The notes beneath the pieces are model-generated. The model searched no databases. It was not told the origin of the DNA and saw only the letters and a program-made list of their open reading frames with translations. Positions 6,340-23,469 of a stretch of DNA of 64,000 bases are shown piece by piece; the first letter of the stretch is position 1; each line of letters opens with the position of its first letter. This DNA comes from Macrostomum lignano (lineage: Eukaryota): contig NIVC01000280.1 of the NCBI GenBank assembly GCA_002269645.1, positions 124,001 through 188,000 of the forward strand, given 5' to 3'. The position numbers and the translations under genes were made by a program.

Positions 6340-7570
6340 TGTGTGCCATGTGATTCTATATTTAGAGCTGATGTTTAGTGCCAAGTAGACGAAAGGTAAA
6401 ATCCATGGATATTCCAAAACGAACTTTTGCACTTTGATACAAGCTAGTACGCTCGTACTAGCAATCTGCCTCACCCTCGTAAACTACTCGTACACGTAGG
6501 TTTTGACCTTTGCCATTGTTAGTATCTTAAGGAAAATGATTTTTAAAGCAAAAAAGCATTAGCCATGAAAGTCAAATATCTGACCTAAGATATCAGAACC
6601 CCCGTGAGCTCTGGCATCAAAGCCTCTCTTGAAGCCATGGCTTAACCCTAACTCTTCCATTGATGTTTGGCCAACCAACAGCTCCCAATTGACCCTTGGC
6701 ATCTCAGCAACCCCCGTAAGCCACATAATTTTAGCTTTAGTGCCCTTGCCTGCTCAGCAGCGCGACAGGAACAAAATACCCCCCAGCAGCGGAGGGGCGG
6801 GCGCCCACCTAACCAACACGAAACAGAACGTACACACAGAAGGAGCGTGCTTGGGCACAAAGCCGGTTTGCTCAAGTGCAAGCCTAGCGCAAACCGCAGC
6901 CTTTCCTGTCTCCTCAGTGTGTTATTCCTGTTTCTGGGCGGCCTATCCCAACCGAATTTGTCAATTCCCATTAAGCCCAATCGTAACGATCAAATTTTTG
7001 CTAATTCCTTTGGAAAAAAACGATTTATAACCGCTGTGGCTGTAACAAGGGTGTAGAATCTGTACAAAGCTTCTTCCACAAGCCCAAAGGCATTGCTTTG
7101 TTGTACAGTGTACTCGTACAAACGTGATTCTATTTTTAGACTTAGTTCCAAGTTCAGAAACTTAAAACCCATGGGATTGCCATGGAACGCTTGTACTAGC
7201 GATCTGCCCCACCCTCCCGTACACTGCTCGTACACGCAGGTTCTGTTTACGACCTTGTACAGTCGCTAGAGCTAGTTTCTTAAGGAAAATGATGTTTTAA
7301 AGTAACAAAGCATCAGCCATGAAAGCCAGCTGTCCAGCTTAAGATATCTGCATCCCCTAAGAGCTTTGGAATAAAAGCCATGCCTTAACCCAAATTCTTC
7401 CTTTGATGTTTGGCCTACCAACAACTCCCAATAGACCTTTGGCATCTCAGCAACCCCCATGAGCCACAGAATTTTAGCCTTTCCTGTCTCCTCGGTGTGT
7501 TCTTCCTGTTTCTGGGCGGTCTTTCTCAACCGGCCATAAAGCCCAATCGAAACGTTCAAATCTTTGCAAC
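6340..7570. repeat. Diverged tandem duplication (~6340-7010 vs ~7120-7570)
   Basis: Colinear similarity, e.g. cttaaggaaaatgat...ttggcatctcagcaaccccc...agcctttcctgtctcctc in both copies; the first copy carries ~165 extra bp. Confidence 0.85.
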
Positions 7571-7696
7571 CGAGTGGCTTGCTGATGATAAACTGAAACC
7601 CATGTCCTGCATTTTGTTAATCAATTTCCATTTCATTGTGGAATAATAAAGTTGATTTGAATCAGAATTCAGTTGAATTACATTGGAGAATTCTAA

Positions 7697-8245
7697 TCAG
7701 CAATCGCTTAGAGAAACTGTCATCTCGGACTCAGTCCAGTCAGGCCCAGCGTCCCGGACTTGTCCTCCACCATAGCTTGGTTCCAGCGGATGTCCAGACC
7801 GCGGGCCGCCGTCTCGCTCTCGACGGCGCGTCAGGCGTCGTTTCTGATAGGCCACAAAAAGTACAGCTCCGGCCATGGCAACGCCCGCCGCCAGAGCGCC
7901 GAGCCCGCCCAGGCCGAGGCGCCGCTGTCCTTCCGCGTTCTTCTTGCTGGCCTCGGCCGCGCACTCCGGGTGCACCAGCTGGAAGGCCCGCCTGTAGAGC
8001 CAGTCCAGCCGGCCAGGAGGTTTTCCGCTGTCCGGTTCAGAGCTCGGACACGGCCTGCACTCGGGCTCGGCTAGGACGGACAGCAGCGACGGCCTGGCCA
8101 GGTAGCTGCCTGGGGGGCAGCCGGACGCTCTGCTCTTGAACAGCCGGGAAGCCCGGATGCTGGCCGATCCGGCCGGACTGAGGCTCAGGTTCAGCAGGAG
8201 CAGCGCGCACAGCACCGACAGTTTCGTTGCCGACGCGCGCTGCAT
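7697..8245 (-). CDS. Intronless type I membrane protein with TNFR/furin-like Cys motif (cluster gene B)
   Basis: Signal peptide; CPPGSYL...ECRPC plus one further Cys; TM LGLGGLGALAAGVAMAGAVLFVAY; basic stop-transfer QKRR; tail contains PLEPSY. Confidence 0.8.
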   Translation of the reverse strand: MQRASATKLSVLCALLLLNLSLSPAGSASIRASRLFKSRASGCPPGSYLARPSLLSVLAEPECRPCPSSEPDSGKPPGRLDWLYRRAFQLVHPECAAEASKKNAEGQRRLGLGGLGALAAGVAMAGAVLFVAYQKRRLTRRRERDGGPRSGHPLEPSYGGGQVRDAGPDWTESEMTVSLSDC

Positions 8246-8431
8246 AAAAATTTCAATGAATTGCTCTCTTTTTTAAATGAGCTCTGCTTAGTAGAGGCCT
8301 AAGCAGGACTCTCGCTCAGCGAGCGAAATAAATTCCACTGCAGTACAGAGATAAGCAGCTGCAGCCACGTCTCGTTGCTTACTCTGCAAATGCGCCCTAA
8401 AATTATTTATATCAAGGATATACGAGCGTAT

Positions 8432-8750
<319 letters not shown>

Positions 8751-9235
8751 AATTTAGGATGGAAGACAATTGAGGTCACACTTAATTTTAGCTTTCTTTA
8801 TCAGTCTACGGGTGTTCCCCAACTTGTACGACTAACAATGTACAACGTTTTTAGAAATGTATTTTTAGCAAGTGTGCAATATGTGTAAATTTGCAATGTA
8901 ATGGTAATTGCTATAATAAGTACTTTGTGAGTTCCATGTTCAAGCTTTCAACTCTGATTCAGAAGCCGCTGAGGCTTTGGTTGCTCGCAAATTTGGCTGT
9001 ATTTCATTTTATCGGAAAGAATTTCAGTATCTGATAGATAAAAACAGCAGCCTTTTGAATGAATTCACTTTGCACAATTTATTCATTCGTTATACTGTTC
9101 ATTTCTCGTCGTAAAATAAAACAAACAAAAAACTATAGAATTTTGCCTCACAAATTTATTTCCGAATAATTACGCTCGTATGATAAAGCACAACATAAAC
9201 CAATAATACATAACATAAACTACATAAAAAAGCCA

Positions 9236-9883
9236 TCAGTTAATTTCTTCATTGTCCACAGTTGAGGCGCCGGCATATGCCGCAATCGGTGTCTCTGCAG
9301 CTGCCAGCGGGTCTTCTTCTCTGGCATCAAATCCGGAATGTTCCTGCAACGCTAATTGCTGCTCCGGTGGAGTCGGTAGCGGCCTGCTCTGCACGGGAGT
9401 GGCGACTGCCTCAGTCATCGGCTGCTGCTCTGGCGTCTGCTCACTACGGGAAGTCGTGCGGAGACGAGTGGAGCTGCCAGTTGACTGCCTGAGCATGGAT
9501 TTTAGCTCGATCTTTTTCACTCGCTTCAAAAGCCAAGCAATCAAAGCGGCAACTCCGGTGAGAACTGCCACGAATGAGCAGACGATGATGACCAGCAACC
9601 AGGTTTCTTCGCTTAAAAAGACGGAGACTGCGCTTGACTCATCCAAAGGTGCTGGCAGTGTTGAAGACTCACGAGATGTGAATCGGTCACCAGGCGCTGG
9701 TGTTGTCATGGTTACGCTGCTCAACGCTGGTGGCTGCGTCAAGACGCACTGGCCAATGTGAGGGTCGAACTTGGTGTTCTCGGGACACACCGGATAAGCG
9801 AAGACGAAGTTCAACAGATGCGTACATAGCAGAGCGAGCAGTCTAGCGAAAATGTTTAACAAGCGCTTCATGTTTACAGCCAT
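9236..9883 (-). CDS. Intronless type I membrane protein with minimal Cys module (cluster gene C)
   Basis: Signal peptide; CPENTKFDPHIGQC; S/T/P stalk; TM WLLVIIVCSFVAVLTGVAALIAWLL; KRVKK; tail with RPLPTPP and AAYAG. Confidence 0.85.
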   Translation of the reverse strand: MAVNMKRLLNIFARLLALLCTHLLNFVFAYPVCPENTKFDPHIGQCVLTQPPALSSVTMTTPAPGDRFTSRESSTLPAPLDESSAVSVFLSEETWLLVIIVCSFVAVLTGVAALIAWLLKRVKKIELKSMLRQSTGSSTRLRTTSRSEQTPEQQPMTEAVATPVQSRPLPTPPEQQLALQEHSGFDAREEDPLAAAETPIAAYAGASTVDNEEIN

Positions 9884-10395
9884 GTCGAGTAGTCAGGGAT
9901 TGTTCTAAAATTTGTCTTTAACGATCGATGCGTTTTATGTTTTCTCCACGGCTGGTCCATGGAGAATCTGTGGCAATTCATTCTTGTTTAGTGAATGCCA
10001 TCAAGTTTAAGGCGTGTTATATTGGAGCATTATGTAATACGAGCTATAATAGCTATTACTTATATATATATACATCATATATAGCAGCAAAGCTTCAAAT
10101 ACAATGGCATATTCCATAGCAATGCGTGAGGCTATTTCTAGAAATTACGAGGTACGACCCCATTGATTCGGTTTGCATAGATGAGCCTGCCGTGTGTGTA
10201 GCAGTTGGTCCTTATTTCATACTGAGCTTACCTTTTTAATAAAATATTTTACAAAAAACGATTACCCTAAAAAGTTTGTTGAAACTGAGGTCAACAACTT
10301 CATCGACAAAAATTTTGGTTCTAAACCAAAAAACGCAATGAGAAAATGATTAATCTTACTCAAAAACCTCAAGTGTACTGTTACTAAGCGACTAA

Positions 10396-10833
10396 ATGCA
10401 CATGCTGGTGCCGGAACGCCAGAGGGCGGCGCTGTTCCAGGCGGTGATCGAGACCGTCCTGTTATACAACGCCGAGACCTGGACGCTGACAGACTCGCTC
10501 GAGGCTCAAGTTGACGCGGCGCACGCTGGCCTGCTGCGCGCCGCCTTCAAGATCGGCAACGAGCGAGTCAACAACACGGCGCTCTATCATCGCGCCGGCC
10601 TGGCCCGTCCTAGCGATCTGCTGCGCCGTCGGCGACTCCAGCTGGCAGGCGCCGAGGCCTACTGTCCGGAGCCGGTGCAGGAGGTGCTGCTACTTACGTT
10701 GCAGGCACCCTACCGGCGGGGACAGGCGAGGACTCGGCGCTACGTCGACTGTCTGCTGGCTGACGCCGGCGCCCCGGACTCTGCCGGCGGTGCGGCCTTT
10801 GTTCGCGCCCAAGCTTCGAAGCGAGCCATCTGA
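10396..10833 (+). mobile_element. Non-LTR retrotransposon fragment (C-terminal part of the RT-containing ORF)
   Basis: LFQAVIETVLLYNAETWTLT...LLRAAF resembles the post-RT LLYGxETW motif of LINE ORF2 proteins; GC-rich island in AT-rich DNA. Confidence 0.75.
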
Positions 10834-10899
10834 CGCTGCTTTTGCGAACTGACAGCGTACTCTGTTGTTGTTGTTGTTGTTGGTGTCATTTACAAATTT

Positions 10900-11050
10900 T
10901 TCTGAGCAGAGCCAGTTTGACATTGGTAAAACAGAGCGAAACCTGCACACAAGAGCAAAGGAACATTTCAAAAAGTGTCCACTGTGCATGATCACCTCGT
11001 GTGCAACCACTGTACACAACGCTAATAGCCGCAACAGCCAACTATATGAC
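10900..11050 (+). mobile_element. GIY-YIG endonuclease remnant, Penelope-like
   Basis: Translation DIGKTERNLHTRAKEH matches the (Y)IGxTxRxLxxRxxEH GIY-YIG motif. Confidence 0.55.
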
Positions 11051-11560
11051 AGAGTGACTGGTGTGCATTTAAAGATTTTCTGACTTTTCTTATTTTTATA
11101 CTGTCCACCACAAATTTTTGGGCGTTTCACCGTGCACCCACTTTCTTTCATCCACTTATCTCGGTTTTCGTTTAATCTGTCAGTAATAATATGTTGTAAC
11201 GTTCTTGTATCTTGATTACGTTGTTTTTATTATCTCTAAATTCAATGTAGATTGTAGATATACAATATTTCAATTTTACATTGCGGCTGTCTTTGAAGTT
11301 CAAGAAGTACTTCGTTCATCCGGTCAGAACATTATTTTTCATTATTATTACTTCGTATCAATTAACGGGCATCAATTAAATAAGGGTACATATGGTACTG
11401 ATATGTATATTTCACAGTATAAGCTGAATTATTTGATTTAATTGATACAACGAAGGAAAAACAAACAAATATATTAATTTTTTCTACTCATATATTGCAT
11501 TAAATATTGTAAAAAGTCTGCATTTATATAACTTGAACTATAATACGATATTCGCAGCTG

Positions 11561-12311
11561 TCAACTACCCAGTCCCGCGTACTCCGGTCGCACAGGGTCC
11601 CTGACCAGCAGATTGAATGCCTCTGCACCATCTGGCCCATCGTCATGTTGAACGTCCTGAAGGAGCTCTTCCTCAGGGACAGGTGGCAGCGGCCACTTGT
11701 TGATCACTGGGACCAGATTACCACCTGAGAAAGTTTAAAGTTAAGTCTTTAGGAACGAAAGCTCACGAGATCAAACCTGTCGATCCTCATGAACAGAATG
11801 AACTACATGTAAATTCAGTAGTTAGTTACAGACAATACAACAAAACATTAGAGCTCTCACCGAAAGGTTCGGGACTGCCAATGCTGATTTTACCGCTGTC
11901 ACAACCATCATTGTTAATGTTTCCAGACTCAACATCTGTTCTTGACCAGGTGAGCAGCTTGTCCTGACGCTTCTGTCTAACCAAAGTCACCAATCGGTAC
12001 AACAACATTCCGAAAGCCGCCATACCAGCAAGCGCCAGTAGTGCAATTATGCTCGGCGTCAGTCTCTCTGTCGAGGGATTTTGCGACGTACTAATGACGT
12101 GGTTCATTGTCGAGTCTGTGGAAATCTGACCAATCCATCCAGTGGTCAAAGCGTCGAACTTTGGTAGAGGCTGAAGTTGCACGCACATGCTGATGCTGGG
12201 GTCGAAGCGCTGATTGACCGGGCAGTCTGCTGTTCTTGTTGCATCATTCAAAGCCGCAACCATTAGCAATAACAGGGACCAGGTCTCCCATGGTGACTTG
12301 AAAATCAGCAT
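11561..12311 (-). CDS. Two-exon type I membrane protein with minimal Cys module (cluster gene D); exons 11861-12311 and 11561-11724
   Basis: Signal peptide; CPVNQRFDPSISMC; TM IIALLALAGMAAFGMLLY. Phase-1 donor TTCG|gtgaga (11861/11860) matches acceptor tttctcag|GT (11725/11724), adding GGNLVPVINKWPLPPVPEEELL...VRPEYAGLGS-stop. Confidence 0.8.
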
Positions 12312-12916
12312 ACTTTATTGTTAACTCTGGGAATATCAAACAAAAGTATTTCAAACAATTTTATATTGAGCTCGTGTTAACGTTCTATTAATAGAGACAG
12401 GGCAACTCGGCGTCATGACTCATTCAAGAAAAATTTAATTCATTAATGACTCAAAGCACCACTTGTTCGTTTGCTTCTATGCAGAAACTATTTTAGTCAA
12501 TGACAGGCCCACAAGCCAAGAATACTGAAATATGAGATAAAATTATGAATGAACGAACTACAATGATGCAACGTTATTCGACGTTAAAATTTCGCCAGGT
12601 CACACGCTCCTCGTATTTTCGGCGATGATGAATGCCTAGTCACCAAAAGAGCACTTCTACATGTAAAAGCGCTGTTCGAAATGAAAAAGACATCAAAATA
12701 CTGTGGATTCTAAGGTGTGCTTAAGCAGTCTCTCAAAGTTTTTCGGGTCCAAAGCTATGAGTTATGCTTTCTCTACATAATCTTCCCGCTTAATACCAGT
12801 TCAAATTTTTGAGTTGCAAACTTTTGTACAATAGATACGAGATCAAAATCATATATCTGAGTCTGCTACGTCTCTTGTCTCTATTTCGTCCTAGAAGGTG
12901 GAATGAGTAGAACTAG

Positions 12917-13855
12917 TCATGAGTGAGTCATGAGCAGAACTGGTGATGGGTGAGTCATGAGAAGAGCTGGTGATAGTTGAGTCATGAGCAGAGCTGGTGA
13001 TGGGTGAGTCATGAGCAGAGCTGGTGGTGGGTGAGTCATGAGCAAAACTGGTGATAGGTGGGTCATGAGCAGAGCTGGTGATGAGTGGGTCATGAGCAGA
13101 GCTGGTGATAGGTGGGTCATGAGCAGAGCTGGTGATGAGTGAGTCATGAGCAGAGCTGGTGATGGGTGAGTCATGAGCAGAGCTGGTGATGAGTGAGTCA
13201 TGAGCAGAGCTGGTGATGAGTGAGTCATGAGCAGAGCTGGTGATGGGTGAGTCATGAGCAGAGCTGGTGATGGGTGAGTCATGAGCAGAGCTGGTGATAG
13301 GTGGGTCATGAGCAGAGCTGGTGATAGGTGAGTCAGGAGCAGAGCTGGTGATAGGTGAGTCATGAGCAGAGCTGGTGATGGGTGAGTCATGAGCAGAGCT
13401 GGTGATAGGTGAGTCATGAGCAGAGCTGGTGATAGGTGGGTCATGAGCAGAGCTGGTGATGGGTGAGTCAGGAGCAGAGCTGGTGATGAGTGGGTCATGA
13501 TCAGAGCTGGTGATGAGTGGGTCATGATCAGAGCTGGTGATAGGTGAGTCAGGAGCAGAGCTGGTGATGAGTGGGTCATGATCAGAGCTGGTGATAGGTG
13601 AGTCAGGAGCAGAGCTGGTGATGAGTGGGTCATGATCAGAGCTGGTGATAGGTGAGTCAGGAGCAGAGCTGGTGATGAGTGGGTCATGATCAGAGCTGGT
13701 GATGAGTGGGTCATGATCAGAGCTGGTGATAGGTGAGTCAGGAGCAGAGCTGGTGATGAGTGGGTCATGATCAGAGCTGGTGATGAGTGGGTCATGATCA
13801 GAGCTGGTGATGGTGAGTCATGAGCAGAGCTGGTGATGGTGAGTCATGAGCAGAA
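12917..13855. repeat. 27-bp minisatellite (GTGAGTCATGAGCAGAGCTGGTGATGG), ~35 units
   Basis: Tandem units read directly; many carry TGAGTCA. Confidence 0.97.
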
Positions 13856-14339
13856 CTAGTTGCATTAAGACGATAGCAAGATAACACTAAATACCAAGTC
13901 AGCTCGAACAGTTGGCATTGAAATTAGCTATTCTGAAGAGATTACAGACCCATTATGAAATTAATCTATGACACGCTGCTTCGGCCGTGTCATCGAAAAA
14001 GTGCACAATCAATAAGAAATATATACTGTTATATTGTGCCCCGAAAGGGCCGTTTTCTGTTTCAACAGCGGCGATTAAATTAAGCAAACGAAAAAGAAGA
14101 ATTCACATTAATGTAAAGTAATTTCGATTTCTTAAAAACTGTTGTTAGAATGAATGCTCTGACAAAACAGAAAAAACTTTCAAAAATACTTTCTGTGGAA
14201 AATAATACTGAATGAACGAAGATTGCATAATCAATACGAGCGTAATAGTTATCAATAATAATATTTGATTAGACCTGCCCCAATTCGCCAGATGTGCAAA
14301 CGACAGCTCAGCCGCAGCTATTGCGCAGTAGGGGGGGAG

Positions 14340-14512
14340 TCGCCACACACACCCTCAGTTACCCCAGCTAATGCTGGCACCCACTTTACAGCTGGGTGAA
14401 CTGAAGCAACGCAGAACTAAGCATCTTGCTCAAGGACACAAATTGTTCCGAGTGGGTCGAGAATCGAACCCCCGACCTTTCAGTCGTGAGTCTGACGCTC
14501 TAACCACTAGGC
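14340..14512 (-). mobile_element. tRNA-derived SINE with a conserved central domain (V/Meta/Nin-like, family uncertain)
   Basis: Minus strand has A box TAGTGGTTAGAGCG and B box GGTTCGATTCT, followed by GTGTCCTTGAGCAAG...TTGCTTCAGTTCACCCAGCTGTAAAGTGGGTGCC; related partial copy at 33744-33802. Confidence 0.75.
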
Positions 14513-14743
14513 AACAATCCCACTAGGCTACAACCCCCACAAGGCTACAACCCCCACAAGGCTACAACCCCCTCTAGGCTACAACCCCCTCTAGGCTACA
14601 ACCCCCTCTTGGCTACAATAGATGGAGGGTTGTAGCCAATAGTCGAGAATGCTTCTAGCATTTTATGATTCATTCAAATATGAATAGATTACCGTGCATA
14701 TTCAACAATCGCAGAGCCAAATCTTCTATAAAAAAGCATGCAT

Positions 14744-15457
14744 TTAAGCTGAGTCATGGGTACTCTCAGGACATGCAGATCTACGAACTGACCCATTTTT
14801 CTGATACACAATCGAATTCATAACTGTGTTCGCTCGCTGCTCGTTTCCATGGTGATTTGCAGGCTGACTCGCTGACGCAAATTCGCGCTCTTCTGTCTGC
14901 TGAGAAGCTGGAGAGTCGGTTCCAGCTGACTGGCCGGCTGCTGCATCGTGTTGGTTGCCATCGCAACTCGGATGTAGAAACGATCTACGCTCTTCATCAC
15001 AAGGCGACGCTGCTACGTCGGTGTTGACATCAGGTGGAACTGAAGCTGATGAGCCCTTTGCGGCCTGCCTTTCTCCCTGCCTGGCTCTGACAAACTTCGT
15101 GTACAGCAGAATGAGAGCCAGGATTTGAACTGTCAGAAGACCAGCAAGCACGAGCGCACCGATGACGATCCAAATGGTTGATTCACCAGCTGCCTGAGCT
15201 GGTGAGCTCGCTGTAGCGTCTGGACGCCACTCGTCAGGGGCGCCTCTCCGCTCGCCTGTCGAGTTGGCAACGCAGCAGACTGGATGGTTGCGACAGGTGC
15301 TCAGGTAGTGCAGGTGGACTTGGATTTCCGGTGAAGGCAGCGGGCAGCGGAGGCACATCTGCTGGCCCGAGTCGAAATACTCGCCAGCCTTTGAGCAGGT
15401 GTTGCCGTAAGCTTGAGCAGCTAGCAGCAATGTGATTAGAACTGACAAGATACTCAT
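14744..15457 (-). CDS. Intronless single-CRD TNFR-like type I membrane protein (cluster gene E)
   Basis: Signal peptide; CSKAGEYFDSGQQMCLRC...CRNHPVCC (6 Cys); TM IWIVIGALVLAGLLTVQILALILLY; ~115-aa tail. Confidence 0.88.
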   Translation of the reverse strand: MSILSVLITLLLAAQAYGNTCSKAGEYFDSGQQMCLRCPLPSPEIQVHLHYLSTCRNHPVCCVANSTGERRGAPDEWRPDATASSPAQAAGESTIWIVIGALVLAGLLTVQILALILLYTKFVRARQGERQAAKGSSASVPPDVNTDVAASPCDEERRSFLHPSCDGNQHDAAAGQSAGTDSPASQQTEEREFASASQPANHHGNEQRANTVMNSIVYQKNGSVRRSACPESTHDSA

Positions 15458-16280
15458 GTTGAAGTCTTGAAAATTTTTTGTAAGGTTAGCTCTGTGAATC
15501 TTTCAAATTTTGTCATACTGGAGCTCAGTAAAATAATGAGTCAGTTCCAGGTACAATGTACAGTAAATGCTTGACTGATAATCTATTTTTACCCATTACC
15601 CGTCTCAACTTCGGTCAGTGACAGTGTTTCAATCTGAGAGCGCTGTGACACAGTTGAGCACACAAGAGAGCTCATTGCTGTGTACTCAGAACTGCACAGT
15701 GCAGAGTACAGTGAGAGAAATTAGCGGTGTATCTCAACGGTAATGGTTGTGTACTGCCCTAACAATGTTTTTAGATTAGCTATTCAGTACATGTACTGGA
15801 CACTTTTTATAGATTATTTTCTTTGTTTATTTTCCTTAAATTTCTACTGTCAGTAGAGTAACAGATAAAAGTTTAGTATAATTTAGACCAGGTGTTTTTG
15901 TTGTACGAAAATGTATCTAGATACGTACATTGTAAGCTTTTTTAATCTTAAAGACTCGTGATTACCTTCAAAAGATTCAAACAAAAAAGGTCGTTAAAAC
16001 GCTCAAGGAAAGTACAGAGGCTTCGGTCTGCCTGGTTCGTCTTATACATGTATTTCAAATTAGGTTAGGGAAATCACCGAGATTGCTGTTGGTTCTGCAG
16101 TGAGTCAAACCGAATTGTAGAAAATCAAGCTTCCGAAAAATGCTCTGAAATTAACCTAACATGAATAACATAAATAACCGATCAGGACAAATAAATTATT
16201 TGGCTTTTTGATTGACAGTGCACAACAGAGAAAAATATGGGAGATTATTTCTTGGATAGTATAGCCAGCTTTAAGCGAGT

Positions 16281-16949
16281 TTAAGATGTGACAGCAAAGG
16301 CAGTCTCGTAGGTACCAGTCGTGTCTTCATCACCATCAGCATAAACGGGTCGGTTCCGATCTTCCAGAGCAGTCTGGAGCAGCTGCAGGCTCGCCTCTCC
16401 ATCTCGGTCTTCAGGAAAGCCGCTGCCTGTCACGGAGCCGGGCGCGCCGCCAGTGATTTCTGCGGCGTTTCCGTCCTCCTCGCCTGTCCTGAAGTCGTGC
16501 GGTAATTCTTGGCTCTTGTGAGAAAACTTCCACACACCGAGCATGATCAAAGCAATGGCCAGGACAGGAGCGGCTGCGCCGAAAACCATCCAACTGGTTG
16601 ACATCCCCTGGGCCTGGAGCGGTGAGCTCAAAGTTGTGGTGCCGCTGCTGCAACTGCTGCTGCTGCTGCTGCTGCTGTGCGGCGGCTTCCAGCTGGGAAC
16701 AGCTGTCGACCCGGATGTTGTGTTGGCAACGCAGCAGACTGGATGGTCGCGACAGGTGCTGAGGTAGTGCAGGTGGATTAGGATTTCCGATGAAGGCAGC
16801 GGGCAGCGGAGGCACATCTGCTGGCCCGGGTCGAAGTACTCGCCAGCCTTTGAGCAGGTGCGGTTGCCAGCTTGTGCGGCGAGCAGCAGTGTGAATAGAA
16901 TTGAAAAGCTGACGGCGGCAGCTTTATTGATTTTGCACATGAAGATCAT
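16281..16949 (-). CDS. Intronless single-CRD TNFR-like type I membrane protein (cluster gene F); ectodomain like E/G, tail like H
   Basis: Likely start at ATG 16949 or 16940; signal peptide; CSKAGEYFDPGQQMCLRC...CRDHPVCC; poly-Ser stalk; TM WMVFGAAAPVLAIALIMLGVW; tail FSHKSQELPH...NRPVYADG. Confidence 0.85.
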   Translation of the reverse strand: MIFMCKINKAAAVSFSILFTLLLAAQAGNRTCSKAGEYFDPGQQMCLRCPLPSSEILIHLHYLSTCRDHPVCCVANTTSGSTAVPSWKPPHSSSSSSSSCSSGTTTLSSPLQAQGMSTSWMVFGAAAPVLAIALIMLGVWKFSHKSQELPHDFRTGEEDGNAAEITGGAPGSVTGSGFPEDRDGEASLQLLQTALEDRNRPVYADGDEDTTGTYETAFAVTS

Positions 16950-17298
16950 CGTTTTTGAGTTGTCTGAAGATTTTATTAAGCACTTGACAAGTTTAATGTC
17001 TGCTTTTAAAGGTTTATCTAGACTAAGACAAGTAAAATTTAGTTCCAAGTCCAAAAAGGTTTTTCCGCGGAAAAACCGTATGGTTGCACGTACATTTATT
17101 TCTATTTATAGAGAATTCGTCACTTAGGGGCTTTCAGACAGAGATAGGCAGAGCCACTCACTGTGTGTTGAGCGAGATGGAGCGCCATTGTGTCAAGGAC
17201 TACTTAAGTATTTATTCTGATATTTGTACAAGGCTGTTACGCAAAAAATGGTTGAATTCAATCAGTTTTATACAATCGCAGTTTGTAAATTTTTAAGA

Positions 17299-18650
17299 TC
17301 AATTTTCAGCATTTTCAACAGAGCTGAGACGCTCATAGCCAGCATCTGAGGAGCTGTCGATTACCTCCTGAGGCTCAGGGGCGGCAGTTGTTGCGGCTCG
17401 AGGCTGCCGATTGCAGCGCCAGACCATCACCACCAGCAGCCCCAGGAGAAGGACCACCGCTGACCAAGAAGCGACCAGCAAAACCATCAATGCAAACTGA
17501 GTGTCAGTCCTGTCAGTCTCACCGGTTGACAGCGTAGATGGCGTCCCGCTGGGGTTCGAACTGGCGGACCGCAGTTCTGCCCTGGTCGCTCCGTCGGGGC
17601 ATCGGACGCAGAGGTTCTGGCCGGGGTCGTAGCAGCGGCCTGTGGGGCGGGGAGAGGCGGGGGTCGCTAAAGAAATTCTGAAGTCAATTTTGCAGTGGCG
17701 AATGGCGCGGCCCGGGAACTTTATGGGGAATATCGGGAGGGAGTGGTGAATATTGAGGATGGGGGATATCGGGGATGGGGGATATCGGGGATGGGATATC
17801 GGGGATGGGGGATATCGGGGATGGGATATCGGGGATGGGGGATATCGGGGATGGGGAAAATCGGGGATGAGGAAAATCGGGATGGGGATATCGGGGATGG
17901 GGGATATCGGGGATGGGGGATATCGGGGATGGGATATCGGGGATAGGGGATATCGGGGATGGGATATCGGGGATGGGGGATATCGGGGATGGGGGAATCG
18001 GGGATGGGTAAAATCGGGGATGGGGGATATCGGGGATGGGATATCGGGGATGGGGGATATGAAAGTATTGGGAATATCAGGGGATGGAAATATCGGGGAT
18101 GGAGAGTATCAGGGATGGGAAAAATCGGGGATGGGGGATATCGGGGATGGGGGATATCGGGGATGGGATATCGGGGATGGGGGATATCGGGAATGGGGGA
18201 TTTCGGGGATGGGGGATATCGGGGATGGGGGATATCGGGGATGGGATTTCGGGGATGGGGGATATCAGGGATGGGAATTAAATAAAAAGGGAGTTATCGG
18301 AGATTGGGAATAACTGGGGATGGTGAATATTGGGGGGATGGGGTTTCTTGGAACACTGCTCGAGCTTAGTTAATGTTGACTAGATTATTAGTAAAAAACA
18401 TTTTTTACAACTTTCCAAAGCAATGGAGCAATGGAAAATTTCTATAAATTAGCTCGTAGTGTTGCAATACATATGAATATTTGCGTCACTTTTAATTTTA
18501 GAAACAACACACGTGTGCACATAAGAAAGGGAATAACGTCAAATAGCTTGAAATAAAATTTTATCTGCTTGAAAAAAATTAAAAGAAAAAATATTTCGAA
18601 ATGCTTGACTCACCTGGCCGCCCGGAGCAGACAGCAGACTCAGACAGCAT
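17299..18650 (-). CDS. Predicted two-exon, signal-peptide-less single-CRD membrane protein (cluster gene I); exons 18614-18650 and 17299-17639, ~125 aa
   Basis: ATG...CCAG|gtgagt (phase 1) joins the pyrimidine-rich acceptor cgcctctccccgccccacag|GC, giving MLSESAVCSGRPGRCYDPGQNLCVRC...TM(LMVLLVASWSAVVLLLGLLVVMVW)...PQEVID...YERL. An alternative in-frame acceptor lies at 17666. Confidence 0.7.
17750..18330. repeat. G-rich satellite (GGGGATATCG variants) inside the predicted intron of gene I
   Basis: Tandem imperfect units. Confidence 0.95.
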
Positions 18651-18691
18651 AGCGACAGACAGCTTGCAGCTGAATTCCCAGCGCGCCCAGG

Positions 18692-18697
18692 TTTATA
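18692..18697 (-). promoter_or_regulatory. Candidate TATA box (TATAAA) for gene I
   Basis: TATAAA on the minus strand ~42 nt upstream of ATG 18650. Confidence 0.45.
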
Positions 18698-19144
18698 AGC
18701 TTTTGAGGCCAAGTCAGAGATAAGATAGCAAACATGGAGTTTAGTTGGGTGTAATATTTTTAGAGGAAATATATAATTTTTGGTCAAAGTTAGCGATCAA
18801 TAAATTAATTTATTAAAAATAAATATACTCAGCAACATTGAAAAGTCGCCACTCTATGCGCCACCAGTTAGCGATTTCTCTTGGACTGTTCTGAAATCAA
18901 AGATACGAGAAAACTGATCGGGGTAGCTTTAATCTGTAGCGTTAACCCTCGCACACCGCACCCCCCACTTCATTCCTCAACTCAAGTCTGCCCAGGCGTA
19001 GCTAATTTGCGTCACTCGCAAAGATTGAGAGACTTCACCTGCACTCACTCTCAATCTTCTGTGATGGCGACTTTTCGATGTTGCTGAATATACGAGTATT
19101 TGACGTTAGACAAGTGGTCTCTAGGCTGAATATCAAAAAAGCTG

Positions 19145-20135
19145 TTAGTTGATGACGGCAGGCTTGTGACGATGGCAGCTACTCGCATGGATTTGTAGGC
19201 TGGCTGGTCTGCGTGACTCTTTGCTGAGATTCCGCAGATTCCGCAGATTCCGCATGTTCCGCAGATTCCGCATGTTCCGCAGATTCCGCAGATTCCGCAG
19301 ATTCCGCAGATTCCGCATGTTCCGCAGATTCCGCATGTTCCGCAGATTCCGCAGATTCCGCAGATTCCGCAGATTCCGCAGATTCCGCATGTTCCGCAGA
19401 TTCCGCAGATTCCGCAGATTCCGCAGATTCCGCATGTTCCGCAGATTCCGCAGATTCCGCAGATTCCGCAGATTCCGCATGTTCCGCAGATTCCGCAGAT
19501 TCCGCAGATTCCGCAGATTCCGCAGATTCCGCAGATTCCGCAGATTCCGCATGTTCCGCAGATTCCGCAGATTCCGCATGTTCCGCAGATTCCGCAGATT
19601 CCGCATGTTCCGCAGATTCCGCAGATTCCGCATGTTCCGCAGATTCCGCATGTTCCGCAGATTCCGCAGATTCCGCAGATTCCGCATGTTCCGCAGATTC
19701 CGCAGATTCCGCAGATTCCGCATGTTCCGCAGATTCCGCATGTTCCGCAGATTCCGCAGATTCCGCAGATTCCGCATGTTCCGCAGATTCCGCAGATTCC
19801 GCAGATTCCGCATGTTCCGCAGATTCCGCATGTTCCGCAGATTCCGCAGATTCCGCAGATTCCGCATGTTCCGCAGATTCCGCAGATTCCGCAGATTCCG
19901 CATGTTCCGCAGATTCCGCAGATTCCGCAGATTCCGCAGATTCCGCATGTTCCGCAGATTCCGCAGATTCCGCAGATTCCGCAGATTCCGCATGTTCCGC
20001 AGGCACCGCAGGCAGTTTACCAGAGGTCGAGGCTGGTTAGCATTGAATAGTTGAATATCATCACCCTGCTGTCCTTGATCTTCCTTCTCTTGACGCCTGT
20101 TAGATCGCGTTGAACGACGCTTGCAATAGCAAACG
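19145..20135 (-). pseudogene. 5'-truncated, frameshifted paralog of gene H with an expanded 9-bp (SAE/HAE) repeat
   Basis: CYCKRRSTRSNRRQ matches H. CGACC-TCTGGT versus CGACCGTCTGGT in H is a 1-nt deletion near 20025. About 86 units of GCAGAATCT/GCGGAACAT type. No signal peptide, CRD or TM. Confidence 0.85.
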
Positions 20136-20214
20136 TGCATACCGTTTAACGGTTACAGATTACCGTGCATATTCAACAATCGCAGAGCCAAATCTTCTAT
20201 AAAAAAGCATGCAT

Positions 20215-20928
20215 TTAAGCTGAGTCATAGGTACTCTCAGGATATGCAGATCTACGAACTGACCCATTTTTCTGATACACAATCGAATTCATAACTGTGT
20301 TCGCTCGCTGCTCGTTTCCATGGTGATTTACAGGCTGACTCGCTGACGCAAATTCGCGCTCTCCTGTCTGCTGAGAAGCTGGAGAGTCGGTTCCAGCTGA
20401 TTGGCCGGCTGCTGCATCGTGTTGGTTGCCATCGTAACTCGTATGTAGAAACGATCTACGCTCTTCATCACAAGGCGACGCTGCTTCGTCGGTGTTGACA
20501 TCAGGTGGGACAGAAGCTGATGAGCCCTTTGCGGCCTGCCTTTCTCCCTGCCTGGCTCTGACAAACTTCGTGTACAGCAGAATGAGAGCCAGGATTTGAA
20601 CTGTCAGAAGACCAGCAAGCACGAGCGCACCGATGACGATCCAAATGGTTGATTCATCGGCTGCCTGAGCTGGTGAGCTCACTTTAGCGTCTGGACGCCA
20701 CTCGTCAGGGGCGCCTCTCGGCTTGCCTGTCGAGTTGGCAACGCAGCAGACTGGATGGTCGCGACAGGTGCTCAGGTAGTGCATGTGGACTTGGATTTCC
20801 GGTGAAGGCAGCGGGCAGCGGAGGCACATCTGCTGGCCCGAGTCGAAGTACTCGCCAGCCTTTGAGCAGGTGTTGCCGTAAGCTTGAACAGCTAGCAGCA
20901 AAGTGAATGGAATTGACAAGATGCTCAT
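20215..20928 (-). CDS. Intronless single-CRD TNFR-like type I membrane protein (cluster gene G), recent duplicate of gene E
   Basis: Same length as E with 25 nt differences in 714 nt (manual count); flanks are also duplicated. Confidence 0.88.
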   Translation of the reverse strand: MSILSIPFTLLLAVQAYGNTCSKAGEYFDSGQQMCLRCPLPSPEIQVHMHYLSTCRDHPVCCVANSTGKPRGAPDEWRPDAKVSSPAQAADESTIWIVIGALVLAGLLTVQILALILLYTKFVRARQGERQAAKGSSASVPPDVNTDEAASPCDEERRSFLHTSYDGNQHDAAAGQSAGTDSPASQQTGEREFASASQPVNHHGNEQRANTVMNSIVYQKNGSVRRSAYPESTYDSA

Positions 20929-21376
20929 GTTGAAGGTCTTGATGACTTTTAATAACAATTTCTGTAAGGTTAGGTCTGTGACTTTTTCAACTTTTCAGAG
21001 CTCAGAAATATAATGAGTCAGTTCCAGGTTCAATTTACAGTGAATGCTTCACTTAGAATCTATTTATATCCATTACTCGTCTCAACACTGGTCAGCGGTA
21101 GTGCTCAATCTGAGAGCACTGTGGTACACTTGAATACTCAGAGAGCTCATTGCTGTGTACTCAGGACTGCACATTGCAGAGTACAGTGAGGGCAATTAGC
21201 GGTGTACCTCAACGGTAACTGTTGTGTAGTGATTTGATAATACATTTATTATCTATTAATTATTAATAATTTATTAGTACTTTTTGCGTATTTTCCTTTC
21301 GTTTTTTCCATATGCGGTTGACGTGCTGATGAAATTTGGAGGCTTGGCAAGGCTGCACTGAGGCACAGTGCTGATT

Positions 21377-21503
21377 GGCGCACAGGGGTGTACTGAATAC
21401 ACTAGCGCTTATGTGGAAAATCCGACCTTCTGGCAGAATCGTTGAATATCTCGACGGTCCTGAGGACTGGCGACTTGATTCCTGTTTGAGAAGGTGCGCA
21501 ACA
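21377..21503. mobile_element. Dispersed repeat; inverted copy at ~31628-31757
   Basis: caggggtgtactgaatacact...gttgaatatctcgacggtcc...gaaggtgcgcaac is the reverse complement of 31628-31757. Absent from the paralogous flank at 15760-16000. Confidence 0.7.
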
Positions 21504-22112
21504 AAAAGTTAGCCCGTCTTCTTGAATTTCGTGTGCCTGTGTTGCTCCGTTCCGGCGCAGCAAAAAAATTGTCAGGGGGTCCCCCTTTTGGTAGTTTGAC
21601 GGGAGGAAAAATGGCTCGCATTGCAAAGCCGCGCCCACACCATTGCAGAGCAGTTTACAATTCAGAAGTTCAGGAGGCGAGAAATTGGGAATTTAGTTCT
21701 AAAAATTATGAAATCTCCCCAATAAATTTCGCAACGCAACGATTTTTTTCAGTCCACCATGAGTAATCGTACGAGTATGGCTTATGCATTCGAACTGGTT
21801 TAGTTTAAGTTTAAAGAAAGTACAGAGGCTTCTGTCTGCCAGGTTCGTCTTATACATGTATTTCAAATTAGGTTAGGGAAATCACCGAGATTGCTGTTGG
21901 TTTTGCAATAAATCAAACCGAATTGTAAAAAAAATCAAGCTTTATCTGACTGAAAAATGCTCTGAAATGAACATAACATGAATAACCGATCAGGACAAAT
22001 TATTTGGCTTTTTGATTGAAAGTGCATAACAAAGAAAAATATGGGAGATTATTGCTTGGATAATACAGTCAACTTTAAGCGAAGTTAGGTGTGACGCCTA
22101 AGGCACAGACTC

Positions 22113-22961
22113 TTAGGTACCAGTCGCAGCCGTGCCTTCATCACCATCAGCATAAGCGGGTCGGTCCCGGTTTTCCAGAGCAGTCGAAAGAAGCTGCAGT
22201 CTCGCCTCTCCGTCTCGGCCTTCAGGAGAGCCGCTGCCAGTCACCGAGCCGGGCGCACCAGTGATCTCTGCGGCGTTTCCATCCTCCTCGCCTGTGGCGT
22301 TTCCGACCTCCGCGCCTGTCCTGAAGCCGTGCGGTAATTCTTGGCTCTTGTGAGAAAACCTTGTGACTCCTTGCTGAGATTCCGCAGATTCCGCAGATTC
22401 CGCAGATTCCGCAGATTCCGCAGATTCCGCAGATTCCGCAGATTTCGCAGATTCCGCAGATTCCGCAGATTCCGCAGGCACCGCAGGCAGTTTACCAGAC
22501 GGTCGAGGCTGGTCAGCTTTGAGTAGTTTAGTATTATCACCCTGCTGTTCTTGATCTTCCAGCTCTTGACGCCTGTTAGATCGCGTTGAACGACGCTTGC
22601 AATAGCAAACGATGGCAATGATGGCGAAAGAAGCCAAAATCAGCACAACAGGTATCACAATTGGTAGGACAATCGCAAGATTAGGAGAAGACGACAAATT
22701 CGAATCGGACTCAGTAGAAACAGACACCGTAGACGCAGCTTCAGTTGATGATGCCGCCCGCTGGGTAGTCAGGCCGTCTCCGCACTCTCCCAAGTCAATC
22801 TCAGCCTGAGTGCAGTGGACGCACCTGTTCTGGCCCGGGTCCCATCGCATGCCCGGCTGGCACACGCTGACTTCGGCGACGGCCATCAGTGACAGCGGCA
22901 ACAGCTGCAGCAGAAGCAGACAGTGGCCAGCTGGCATTCCGCACTTATCGAATCTCAGCAT
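22113..22961 (-). CDS. Intronless single-CRD TNFR-like type I membrane protein with cytoplasmic (SAE)10 repeat (cluster gene H)
   Basis: Likely start ATG 22961 or 22937; signal peptide; CQPGMRWDPGQNRCVHC...GEC; TM LAIVLPIVIPVVLILASFAIIAIVCYC; KRR; tail ends DRPAYADG. Confidence 0.88.
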   Translation of the reverse strand: MLRFDKCGMPAGHCLLLLQLLPLSLMAVAEVSVCQPGMRWDPGQNRCVHCTQAEIDLGECGDGLTTQRAASSTEAASTVSVSTESDSNLSSSPNLAIVLPIVIPVVLILASFAIIAIVCYCKRRSTRSNRRQELEDQEQQGDNTKLLKADQPRPSGKLPAVPAESAESAESAKSAESAESAESAESAESAESAESQQGVTRFSHKSQELPHGFRTGAEVGNATGEEDGNAAEITGAPGSVTGSGSPEGRDGEARLQLLSTALENRDRPAYADGDEGTAATGT

Positions 22962-23469
22962 TTTCAAAGCTTTAATAAAAAGACCTGAAACTGTGTGACT
23001 CTGCTTATGTCTAAAAATAAGCAGATAAGACCCGCCAGCCAGATATGGAAGTTTCTTAATTTCGCTGAAATCAGAAATTTCACTCAAAAAAGCAAATAAA
23101 AAACTTTTTGTCAGTTCAATTCTGCAAAGCAGACGGTCCAGAAGCAATGAAGAAAGCGGTACAAATGAATGTGTTTATTTATGCTGATGCTTCAGATGTC
23201 TGCATCATTTCTAAAACCGGTACTCTAAATTTCAGGAATGGAAAACTTTGAAAACTGCGGCTCTGCAATGCAGCTTGGCAACAGAAACAGATGATGGAAT
23301 TAGAATTGGCAGATTAGCGGAGCACAGGACTGGCTCGAGTGCACAATTGCTACGGATTAATTACCTAAACAGCAGATTAACCTGATTATTCTGACTTGAT
23401 TATGCCTCTTTAATAAGATAGCTTAGATAGACTGCCCAAATTCACCGGTGCAAATCCGGCAACCTTATT

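What the first reader, a model, noticed from the sequence alone, without database searches (positions are those of the whole stretch)
17299..18697. Hidden spliced receptor lacking a signal peptide (type III topology, as in BCMA/TACI/BAFF-R)
Seen: the ORF track shows only a 63-aa TM fragment. Upstream in frame lies RCYDPGQNLCVRC with no first Cys or ATG. A 37-nt exon at 18614-18650 (perfect CAG|gtgagt donor, TATAAA 42 nt upstream) splices in phase 1 across a 974-nt satellite-filled intron. It supplies both the ATG and the missing Cys: MLSESAVCSGRPGRCYDPGQNLCVRC. The 125-aa product has no leader. Known: BCMA, TACI, BAFF-R and XEDAR are leaderless type III TNFRs with Cys within ~8 residues of Met. 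The tail has PQEVID (PxExxD, TRAF6-type) and YERL.
Basis: partly seen in the sequence, partly recalled or inferred. Interest (0 to 1): 0.7.

Follow-up and report, generated by a model that had tools for sequence, protein, structure and literature searches.

The report
Unannotated leaderless TNFR-like flatworm receptor gene
The window is flatworm (Macrostomum lignano) DNA, and the finding is most likely a real, unannotated two-exon gene for a small BAFF-R-like membrane receptor that, unlike its neighbouring sister genes, has no signal peptide; no RNA data were available to prove the splice.

Summary
The window is Macrostomum lignano contig NIVC01000280.1, a free-living flatworm and not a vertebrate.

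The candidate lies on the minus strand inside a tandem array of at least seven small single-pass receptor genes. They share a C…[F/Y/W]-D-[P/S]-G-Q…C-x-x-C hairpin.

**For the two-exon model**
- The CAG|GTGAGT donor is the only 9/9 consensus donor in the 4.5 kb upstream of the acceptor.
- It closes the only sensible ATG-started, phase-1 exon.
- That exon supplies the family's invariant first cysteine.
- The spliced reading frame is intact in all three genomic copies (125, 125 and 123 aa). Coding indels are 3 nt; nearby non-coding indels are mostly 1 nt.

**For the BAFF-R/BCMA likeness**
- The best PDB fold match of the predicted hairpin is human BAFF-R. Sister gene B matches BCMA.
- None of these matches is statistically significant.

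**Against**
- There is no transcript evidence and no gene call.
- No homolog was found outside this species.
- All sister genes have leaders, so a decaying paralog is not excluded.

Verdict: probably a real new member of a known kind. Type III topology and TRAF6 signalling are inferred only.

The parts
18692..18697 (-). TATAAA, a possible core promoter 42 nt before the ATG. It lies between an out-of-frame upstream ATG (18735) and the proposed start.
   Evidence: It is kept in all three copies. TATA-like hexamers are not consistently placed upstream of the sister genes, so this is weak evidence.
18614..18650 (-). Exon 1 coding part, 37 nt: MLSESAVCSGRP plus the first base of G13. It supplies the start codon and Cys8.
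   Evidence: GC is 0.65, against 0.33 in the intron just downstream. Cys8 falls in the invariant Cys column of the family alignment. The exon is identical in L002 and has one substitution (E4G) in L001.
17640..18613 (-). Proposed 974-nt GT-AG intron, phase 1. Donor GTGAGT is at 18613-18608. The C-rich tract and CAG acceptor end at 17640.
   Evidence: The donor and acceptor fit the M. lignano cis-splice motifs GT[G/A]AG and CAG (PMC8629364). The length is typical: mean intron length in this species is 1.1-1.4 kb (PMC5730564). The intron is 974, 800 and 693 nt in the three copies, differences that are not multiples of three.
17750..18275 (.). 16-nt minisatellite (about 33 copies) inside the intron. 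Copy number differs between the three genomic copies.
17299..17639 (-). Exon 2 coding part: residues G13 (last two bases) to N125, plus the TGA stop.
   Evidence: The frame is open in all three copies, and both indels are 3 nt. GC is 0.60, against 0.37 in the 3' flank.
17599..17639 (-). Exon-2 part of the four-Cys hairpin module (C8, C15, C23, C26): RCYDPGQNLCVRC. Cys8 is in exon 1 at 18629-18627.
   Evidence: AlphaFold2 predicts strands at 14-17 and 22-25, with pLDDT about 75. The Foldseek top hit is human BR3 2hfg_R. hhalign places the motif in register with BCMA, TACI and BAFF-R.
17419..17496 (-). Transmembrane helix, F61-W86, followed by RCNRQPR.
   Evidence: A predicted helix spans residues 54-90, with pLDDT about 90. 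The sequence was read.
17302..17418 (-). 39-residue cytoplasmic tail with PQEVID (17373-17356) and YERL (17337-17326).
   Evidence: Read from the sequence. The motifs are kept in the three copies but are not shared by the sister genes.
17211..17216 (-). AATAAA polyadenylation signal, 83 nt after the stop codon.
7697..23147 (-). Tandem array of sister genes on the same strand, given as ATG to stop. A is 22961-22113, B 20928-20215, C 16949-16281, D 15457-14744, E 12311-11826, F 9883-9236 and G 8245-7697. All have hydrophobic leaders.
   Evidence: B/D relatives are named 'TNFR-Cys domain-containing' by UniRef. The model of B's ectodomain matches BCMA in 11 of its 14 Foldseek hits.

Best explanation
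This is a real but unannotated two-exon gene of Macrostomum lignano. A 37-nt first coding exon (ATG plus the first cysteine) is cis-spliced across a 974-nt minisatellite-bearing intron to a 341-nt second exon.

The product is a 125-residue single-pass membrane protein with three parts:
- a short N-terminal ectodomain holding one four-cysteine beta-hairpin, with the Cys spacing of the BAFF-R partial CRD (the 'X2' module type);
- one membrane helix;
- a 39-residue tail.

It is a diverged paralog, closest to gene A, within a local tandem array of BCMA/BAFF-R-like hairpin receptors that otherwise carry cleavable leaders. This copy has no leader. To reach the surface it would have to insert as a type III (N-out) signal-anchor protein, as vertebrate BAFF-R, BCMA and TACI do.

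**Shown:** the exon-intron anatomy, its uniqueness in the upstream sequence, its preservation in three genomic copies, the family relationship, and the lack of a leader.

**Inferred:** that the intron is actually spliced, the N-out topology, binding of one of the species' TNF-family ligands through the hairpin, and any TRAF-type signalling from the tail.
For: - **Anatomy.** All features were read directly.
- **Uniqueness.** There is one 9/9 consensus donor in the 4472 nt upstream, and it is the one that closes an ATG-started phase-1 exon. The background for that is 27% of positions, or 3% if a Cys must also lie 4-8 residues before the junction.
- **Species fit.** Donor and acceptor match the species' own motifs, and the intron length is typical (PMC8629364; PMC5730564).
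- **Composition.** GC steps sit exactly at the exon borders: 0.65 to 0.33 and 0.60 to 0.37.
- **Family alignment.** Cys8 from exon 1 lands in the invariant Cys column.
- **Closest paralog.** The spliced protein aligns with contiguous paralog A across the junction: residues 2-91, 30% identity, E 1e-5 in the window.
- **Three loci in the same assembly.** L001, L002 and the window all keep the ATG, donor, acceptor and frame, giving 125, 125 and 123 aa.
- **Indels.** Both coding indels are 3 nt. Non-repeat non-coding indels are four of 1 nt and one of 21 nt. One 1-nt deletion lies just upstream of the 17640 acceptor.
- **Structure.** A hairpin and a membrane helix are predicted. The best PDB fold match is BAFF-R, then BCMA. 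Sister gene B matches BCMA. hhalign against BCMA, TACI and BAFF-R gives P = 0.004, in register.
- **Topology.** No hydrophobic leader, and the charge bias favours N-out (sequence).
[quoted passage not shown] M. lignano has TNF ligands (PMC7519573).
- **Polyadenylation.** AATAAA lies 83 nt after the stop.
Against: - No RNA evidence of any kind was reachable.
- No gene is called here in any of the three copies. The annotation also misses the clear sister genes C, D and E on the window's contig, and A on L001/L002, so this counts for little.
- The three copies are about 97-98% identical everywhere. Exons (9 substitutions in 378 nt) are not clearly better kept than unique intron (about 11 in 314 nt). 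Exon 2 has 5 nonsynonymous and 3 synonymous changes, which cannot be told apart from neutral drift.
- All sister genes have leaders, so leader loss could be the lesion that killed this copy.
- If the TATAAA drives transcription, the 5'UTR is only about 10-15 nt. If transcription starts further upstream, an out-of-frame ATG at 18735 opens a 31-codon ORF that overlaps the start codon.
- No homolog of the product was found outside M. lignano, by word search or by exhaustive HMMER.
- No significant match to any TNFR model.
Confidence: 0.58

Rival explanations
1. Decaying paralog. The locus is a recently inactivated copy of an A-like type I receptor gene that lost its signal peptide and took a 1-kb insertion in its cysteine-rich coding region. 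On this reading the ATG, donor and acceptor are fortuitous or unused, and no functional protein is made.
For: - Every sister gene has the leader and the hairpin in one uninterrupted ORF. Both the intron and the missing leader are therefore derived states of this copy.
- Substitutions among the three copies look neutral, 5 nonsynonymous to 3 synonymous.
- No gene call and no homolog elsewhere.
- The array shows other debris: an A-like tail fragment at 19145-20140, just upstream.
Against: - The 113-codon exon-2 frame is open in a copy that shares no detectable DNA similarity with any sister gene. An old pseudogene would be expected to carry stop codons; at 60% GC I estimate about a 3% chance of staying open, which is an inference.
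- All four cysteines, the helix and the basic stop-transfer stretch are intact.
- Both coding indels are 3 nt, while four of the five neighbouring non-coding indels are 1 nt.
- A perfect donor in the right phase with an ATG and the right Cys is unlikely by accident.
Confidence: 0.25
2. A real gene with a different 5' end. Exon 2 is expressed but is joined to something else: a spliced leader, or an undetected upstream exon carrying a signal peptide. Alternatively it is translated only from Met63, giving a 63-residue membrane-anchored tail without an ectodomain.
For: [quoted passage not shown]
- SL-type acceptors (YTNCAG) lie on the minus strand at 17678, 18891 and 18934.
- B-like and C-like genes flank the candidate on L001 and share one unit number, Mlig031201 g1 and g2. 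This might mean a single transcription unit.
Against: - The SL's ATG joined at 17678, 17667 or 17640 is out of frame with the hairpin-helix frame. At 17678 the junction itself forms an in-frame TGA stop (worked out).
- No ATG-started, leader-like exon with a usable donor exists in the 4.5 kb upstream. The other donors, at 19049, 19039 and 20683, are ORF-less or in the wrong phase.
- A 63-residue product would waste a conserved four-Cys module.
Confidence: 0.12
3. Chance. Exon 2 is an accidental open frame next to a C-rich minisatellite, and the receptor-like features come from its composition.
For: The C-rich strand of the minisatellite is itself open in this frame from about 18110. Exon 1 lies in CTGT-rich low-complexity sequence.
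Against: - The protein aligns with paralog A over ectodomain, stalk and helix (E 1e-5).
- It carries the family motif [Y]DPGQ..C.xC shared with six neighbours.
- A hairpin and a helix are predicted with confidence.
Confidence: 0.04

Closest known systems
BAFF-R / BR3 (TNFRSF13C), vertebrates
   Same: - Four-cysteine partial CRD forming one beta-hairpin. The candidate has C8-x6-C15-Y-D-x5-C23-x2-C26; human BAFF-R has C19-x4-C24-F-D-x5-C32-x2-C35 (sequence checked against PDB 1osx).
- No signal peptide, a short ectodomain and a single helix, i.e. type III (PMC5360319).
- BAFF-R (2hfg_R) is the best PDB fold match of the model: 18 columns, rmsd 1.4 A, 39% identity.
- It is the best receptor hit of the family profile.
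   Different: - No match is significant (E about 1).
- The ligand-contact D-L-L tip is D-P-G here.
- The tail is unrelated and has no PVPAT-type TRAF3 site (own knowledge).
- The organism is a flatworm with no B cells, so orthology is very unlikely to be one-to-one.
BCMA (TNFRSF17) and TACI CRD2 (TNFRSF13B)
   Same: - Sister genes B, C and D have C-x12-C-x2-C with Y-F-D, exactly the spacing of BCMA C8-x12-C21-x2-C24.
- Eleven of the 14 Foldseek hits of B's ectodomain model are BCMA, and TACI is also listed. The hairpin rmsd is 0.4-0.8 A at 42-47% identity.
- The profile comparison is in register, P = 0.004.
   Different: - The flatworm sister genes have signal peptides; BCMA and TACI do not.
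- Cys spacing in the second module differs.
- The candidate itself lacks the second (helical) module altogether.
Drosophila Grindelwald and Wengen (invertebrate single-CRD TNFRs)
   Same: - They are invertebrate receptors with one small CRD that bind the TNF ligand Eiger.
- Grindelwald's N-terminal module is an X2 hairpin with two intercalated disulfides, a topology also seen in BAFF-R (PMC8024323).
- A preprint counts up to 19 Wengen-like homologs in one platyhelminth species (10.1101/2024.07.27.603686).
   Different: - No sequence match to either was obtained here. They did not appear in the PDB searches.
- Grindelwald has eight cysteines (X2 plus C2 modules).
- Whether the array members are among the counted Wengen-like homologs was not checked.
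Previously described platyhelminth TNFRs (SmTNFR type)
   Same: The same phylum and the same superfamily label. M. lignano also has TNF ligands (PMC7519573).
   Different: Those receptors have a signal peptide, four CRDs and often a death domain. The candidate has one partial CRD, no leader and a 39-residue tail.

Membership tests
BAFF-R/BCMA/TACI-type hairpin receptors (TNFRSF) | Beta-hairpin module with the Cys framework C..(C)-aromatic-D-x5..6-C-x2-C | tested here: met
   The sequence has C8, C15-Y-D, C23 and C26. Strands are predicted at 14-17 and 22-25. The alignment is in register with BCMA, TACI and BAFF-R. The best fold hit is BR3.
BAFF-R/BCMA/TACI-type hairpin receptors (TNFRSF) | Statistically significant match to a TNFR cysteine-rich domain model or structure | tested here: not met
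   - No Pfam TNFR-family hit for the candidate or any sister gene.
- phmmer against PDB found none.
- The family profile against PDB gave BAFF-R at E 1.2.
- Foldseek gave E of 1.2 or worse.
- hhalign gave P 0.004 but only 8% probability.
- UniRef's 'TNFR-Cys domain-containing' label applies to B/D relatives only.
BAFF-R/BCMA/TACI-type hairpin receptors (TNFRSF) | Asp-x-Leu ligand-contact motif at the hairpin tip | tested here: not met
   The tip is Y-D-P-G-Q-N-L. The Asp is kept, but Leu at +2 is replaced by Gly. The whole flatworm array has [F/Y/W]-D-[P/S] instead. The motif definition is from PMC8024323.
BAFF-R/BCMA/TACI-type hairpin receptors (TNFRSF) | Type III topology: no cleavable leader, N terminus outside | tested here: inconclusive
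   Absence of a leader is shown (hydropathy 0.92, against 2.4-3.2 in sister genes), and the charge bias favours N-out. No compatible upstream leader exon exists. The actual topology cannot be tested with these tools.
BAFF-R/BCMA/TACI-type hairpin receptors (TNFRSF) | Binds a TNF-family ligand trimer | not testable with these tools
   The species has TNF ligands (PMC7519573). No binding data exist.
BAFF-R/BCMA/TACI-type hairpin receptors (TNFRSF) | TRAF-binding motif in the tail | tested here: inconclusive
   PQEVID fits P-x-E-x-x-(acidic/aromatic) and is kept in the three copies. The copies are about 97% identical overall, the motif is not shared by the sister genes, and a six-residue pattern is easily produced by chance.
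Local M. lignano hairpin-receptor array (genes A-F) | Same strand and position in the array, shared invariant Cys-Asp-Cys columns, and a single helix | tested here: met
   The closest member is A: 30% identity over residues 2-91, E 1e-5.
Local M. lignano hairpin-receptor array (genes A-F) | N-terminal hydrophobic leader, with leader and hairpin in one uninterrupted exon | tested here: not met
   The candidate lacks about 22 leader residues and needs an intron between G13 and R14.
Spliceosomal GT-AG intron of M. lignano | Donor GT[G/A]AG, acceptor CAG and a typical length | tested here: met
   The donor is GTGAGT, and the acceptor is a pyrimidine tract plus CAG. Motifs are from PMC8629364. The intron is 974 nt, against a mean of 1.1-1.4 kb. 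Minisatellites also lie within the span of the neighbouring WDR11 gene.
Spliceosomal GT-AG intron of M. lignano | Junction seen in RNA | not testable with these tools
   No M. lignano transcript data were reachable. The protein collection holds only genome-derived calls for this species.
Pseudogene | Frame-disrupting lesions (stops or frameshifts) in at least some copies | tested here: not met
   The spliced frame is intact in all three loci, and both coding indels are 3 nt. Loss of the leader could still be an inactivating lesion.

The most novel reading that the evidence does not exclude
A type I receptor gene became a type III receptor gene within a flatworm gene array. One paralog lost its signal peptide and gained a minisatellite-bearing intron at a CAG|G proto-splice site inside the cysteine-rich coding exon, yet stayed functional. 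That would be an independent flatworm parallel to the leaderless state of vertebrate BAFF-R, BCMA and TACI. Its ancestral state, leader-bearing and intronless, would still be visible in the neighbouring paralogs.
Probability: 0.25. Interest if true: 0.5.

Novelty: new member of a known kind. Interest (0 to 1): 0.3.

Why it matters
If the transcript exists, three things follow.
- It adds an unannotated receptor to the TNF-receptor repertoire of a regeneration model organism.
- It shows that small BAFF-R/BCMA-like hairpin receptors occur in tandem arrays in a flatworm.
- It offers a natural side-by-side comparison of leader-bearing and leaderless versions of the same tiny ectodomain, which bears on how type III topology arises.

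It also shows that the public annotation of this minisatellite-rich genome misses short genes, while calling repeat-derived ORFs as proteins. On its own it is a modest finding: one small lineage-specific gene whose expression is unproven.

Tried and rejected
1. **Homology searches with the 125-aa product.**
   - Word-indexed search: nothing.
   - Exhaustive HMMER against 1.8 billion representatives: two weak hits confined to the membrane-helix region, a protocadherin and a fish membrane protein.
   - Pfam gave only sub-threshold helix/stalk matches.
   - PDB sequence searches found nothing.
2. **Family profile search.** Only M. lignano proteins came back.
3. **DNA similarity of the locus to the rest of the window.** None.
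4. **'Leader remnant' idea.** The sequence upstream of the ATG aligns loosely with paralog A's leader-coding DNA, but not significantly (score 24; 6.7% of shuffles did as well).
5. **Upstream ATG at 18735.** It opens a mildly hydrophobic 31-codon ORF, but in another frame, and it stops inside exon 1. It cannot be joined to the hairpin frame.
6. **Alternative acceptor at 17667.** Disfavoured: copy L001 has a 1-nt deletion in the 27 nt between the two acceptors.
7. **Spliced-leader trans-splicing.** The SL's ATG is out of frame at 17640, 17667 and 17678. At an AG 20 nt before the start codon it would only create a 10-codon upstream ORF.
8. **Other upstream first exons or leader exons.** None within 4.5 kb.
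9. **TATAAA as a shared promoter element of the array.** Not shared.
10. **Selection test from substitutions among the three copies.** Uninformative, because the copies are too similar.
11. **Internal donor-like site CCG|GTGAGA in exon 2, near 17521.** The only downstream AG would give an intron of about 26 nt, so read-through is assumed.
12. **Literature search for the locus names.** Nothing found.
13. **Rfam.** Nothing at the locus.
Full report
**What the window is**

The window is extremely rich in minisatellites (79 TRF rows) and looks eukaryotic. A neighbouring ORF (B, 20215-20958) matches NCBI proteins of the free-living flatworm Macrostomum lignano at 88-92% identity. UniRef names these 'TNFR-Cys domain-containing'.

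Window 1-19883 is 100% identical to contig NIVC01000280.1 of assembly GCA_002269645.1, so window coordinate p equals record coordinate 124000 + p. This is a flatworm locus, not a vertebrate immune locus.

**Checking the observation**

- ATG at 18650; a 37-nt exon ending CAG|GTGAGT.
- TATAAA ending 42 nt before the ATG.
- A 974-nt intervening sequence, 54% of it a 16-nt minisatellite.
- A C-rich tract and CAG acceptor ending at 17640.
- A phase-1 join that yields the quoted 125-residue product.

Without splicing, the frame runs back through 'PTGRCYD…' with no start codon.

I enumerated the 4472 nt between the acceptor and the stop codon of gene A. There is exactly one 9/9 match to MAG|GTRAGT, none at 8/9 and four at 7/9. 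Only two ATG-started phase-1 first exons exist, and the second is a 10-nt exon with a poor donor. Across that stretch, 27% of positions would give an ATG-open phase-1 exon, and 3% would also place a Cys 4-8 residues before the junction. With roughly 0.07 perfect donors expected in 4.5 kb (my estimate from a uniform base model), the combination is unlikely to be accidental.

**Context, the main new fact**

The candidate sits in a same-strand tandem array of small single-pass membrane-protein genes: A 22961-22113, B 20928-20215, C 16949-16281, D 15457-14744, E 12311-11826, F 9883-9236 and probably G 8245-7697. Each has, in one uninterrupted ORF, a hydrophobic leader followed by C-x5..6-[F/Y/W]-D-[P/S]-G-Q-x2-C-x-x-C.

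In the family alignment the candidate's Cys8, supplied by exon 1, falls in the invariant Cys column. The candidate simply lacks the roughly 22 leader residues. Its closest relative is A: 30% identity over residues 2-91, across the proposed junction, E 1e-5 within the window. Maximum 9-residue hydropathy at the N terminus is 0.92, against 2.4-3.2 for the sister genes.

**Splice model against species knowledge**

M. lignano cis-splice motifs are GT[G/A]AG and CAG (PMC8629364). Mean intron length is 1.1-1.4 kb, with about five introns per gene (PMC5730564). Tandem arrays also lie inside the span of the neighbouring WDR11 gene. A 974-nt satellite-bearing GT-AG intron is therefore ordinary here. 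GC content steps at the proposed borders: exon 1 0.65, 5' part of the intron 0.33, exon 2 0.60, 3' flank 0.37. AATAAA lies 83 nt after the stop.

**Three genomic copies**

The same assembly holds two further copies of the whole array next to WDR11: L001 (NIVC01001652.1) and L002/L003 (NIVC01000276.1). All keep the ATG, donor, acceptor and frame. The products are 125, 125 and 123 aa. The introns are 974, 800 and 693 nt, differing through minisatellite copy number and not by multiples of three.

The copies are about 97-98% identical everywhere, so substitution rates say nothing: 9 changes in 378 exon nt against about 11 in 314 unique intron nt, with 5 nonsynonymous and 3 synonymous in exon 2.

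Indels are more telling. Both in exon 2 are 3 nt. The five outside repeats in non-coding sequence are four of 1 nt and one of 21 nt. One 1-nt deletion in L001 lies between the alternative acceptor at 17667 and the acceptor at 17640. This argues that the stretch is not coding, and it favours 17640.

**Annotation**

No gene is called at the locus in any copy. That counts for little. On the window's own contig the annotation also misses C, D and E, while calling two minisatellite ORFs as proteins (19145-20140, 331 aa; 12917-13795, 292 aa).

**What the protein resembles**

Sequence searches are negative:
- Pfam.
- PDB by sequence.
- Word-indexed search.
- Exhaustive HMMER (only helix-region noise).
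- The family profile, which found M. lignano proteins only.

Weaker tests all point the same way:
- A profile of the array's hairpins has BAFF-R (2hfg_R) as its best receptor hit, in register, at E 1.2.
- hhalign against BCMA, TACI-CRD2 and BAFF-R gives P = 0.004 but only 8% probability.
- AlphaFold2 predicts strands at 14-17 and 22-25 (pLDDT about 75) and a helix at 54-90 (pLDDT about 90).
- The best Foldseek hit of that model among 350,542 PDB chains is human BAFF-R/BR3, followed by BCMA and BR3 again.
- For sister gene B's ectodomain, 11 of the 14 hits are BCMA, with TACI and TNFR2 also listed.

No single match is significant, which is expected for 18-40 residue domains.

The Cys spacing of the candidate (C-x6-C-Y-D-x5-C-x2-C) matches the four-Cys partial CRD of BAFF-R (C-x4-C-F-D-x5-C-x2-C). 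B, C and D match BCMA's C-x12-C-x2-C. Grindelwald's N-terminal module has the same X2 hairpin type as BAFF-R (PMC8024323). The DxL ligand-contact tip is not kept; it is D-P-G here.

**Topology and signalling (inferred)**

There is no leader, the ectodomain is 60 residues, the 15 residues before the helix have net charge -2, and +3 follows within seven residues. By the positive-inside rule this favours N-out insertion. That is the arrangement documented for BAFF-R, BCMA and TACI (PMC5360319).

PQEVID fits P-x-E-x-x-acidic and YERL fits YxxL. Both are short, are not shared by the sister genes, and are conserved only among near-identical copies.

M. lignano has several TNF ligands (PMC7519573). 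The flatworm TNFRs described so far are four-CRD, leader-bearing proteins (same paper). A preprint counts up to 19 Wengen-like homologs in one platyhelminth species.

**Alternatives examined**

- *Spliced-leader trans-splicing.* The SL ends in ATG, but it is out of frame at 17640, 17667 and 17678. SL-type acceptors further upstream (18891, 18934) would add upstream ATGs.
- *Upstream ATG at 18735.* It opens a 31-codon ORF in another frame that ends inside exon 1. The proposed start is used efficiently only if transcription begins between 18733 and 18650, which is where the TATAAA would place it. That hexamer is not a shared feature of the array.
- *Leader remnant.* The similarity between the 5' flank and A's leader-coding DNA is not significant.

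**Verdict**

The most likely reading, about 0.6, is a real, unannotated two-exon paralog encoding a leaderless BAFF-R-like hairpin receptor. The main rival, about 0.25, is a recently crippled copy whose leader loss is the lesion. This is a new member of a known kind and is of modest interest.

Noticed in passing
window 7697-23147 (minus strand): A tandem array of at least seven small BCMA/BAFF-R-like hairpin receptor genes lies next to WDR11. It is present in three copies in the assembly. On the window's contig, C, D and E have no CDS call in the NCBI record; A has none on L001/L002.
   Followed up: partly
window 19145-20140 and 12917-13795 (minus strand): The NCBI record calls a 331-aa and a 292-aa protein that are translations of an 18-nt and a 27-nt minisatellite (…LRNLRNMRN…, …MTHSSPALL…). 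These are almost certainly spurious CDS calls.
   Followed up: partly
window 19145-20140 versus 22113-22700: The start of the 331-aa ORF (CYCKRRSTRSNRRQE…) copies the juxtamembrane region of gene A. Another frame reads (AESAES)n followed by QQRVTQ…stop. Gene A instead continues from the same repeat into a tail homologous to gene C's tail (FSHKSQELPH…). The array has evidently been reshuffled by unequal recombination, and A looks like a fusion.
   Followed up: no
window 4476-6242 (minus strand): A mucin-like single-pass membrane protein ORF (588 aa). Its ectodomain consists of 16.5 copies of a 51-nt (17-aa) repeat. The NCBI record calls it as 570 aa with a faint PLDc hit.
   Followed up: no
window 24391-33720 (minus strand): A WDR11 homolog (1325 aa in the NCBI model). 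Its span holds many minisatellites, including (AAACCC)n at 32265-32753 and (AGTG)36 at 30452-30596. Two tRNA genes lie within the span at 31189-31261 (-) and 31481-31557 (+).
   Followed up: partly
window 37343-38308: A nearly 1-kb (CT)n dinucleotide tract lies just downstream of what looks like an SLC3A2/CD98hc-like gene. That gene's ORF fragments are at 39367-40778 on the minus strand, with a 21-nt repeat inside the ORF at 40038-40200.
   Followed up: no
window 7697-8245 (minus strand): Gene G (182 aa, called in NCBI) has a leader and a CPPGSY…C-x-P-C pattern. This looks more like a canonical TNFR module than like the hairpin of genes A-F.
   Followed up: no
L001 10001-10769 and 13071-13766: The B-like and C-like genes that flank the candidate on NIVC01001652.1 carry the names Mlig031201g1 and Mlig031201g2. 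If the number denotes one transcription unit, the candidate region would be transcribed as part of it. The meaning of the numbering could not be established.
   Followed up: partly
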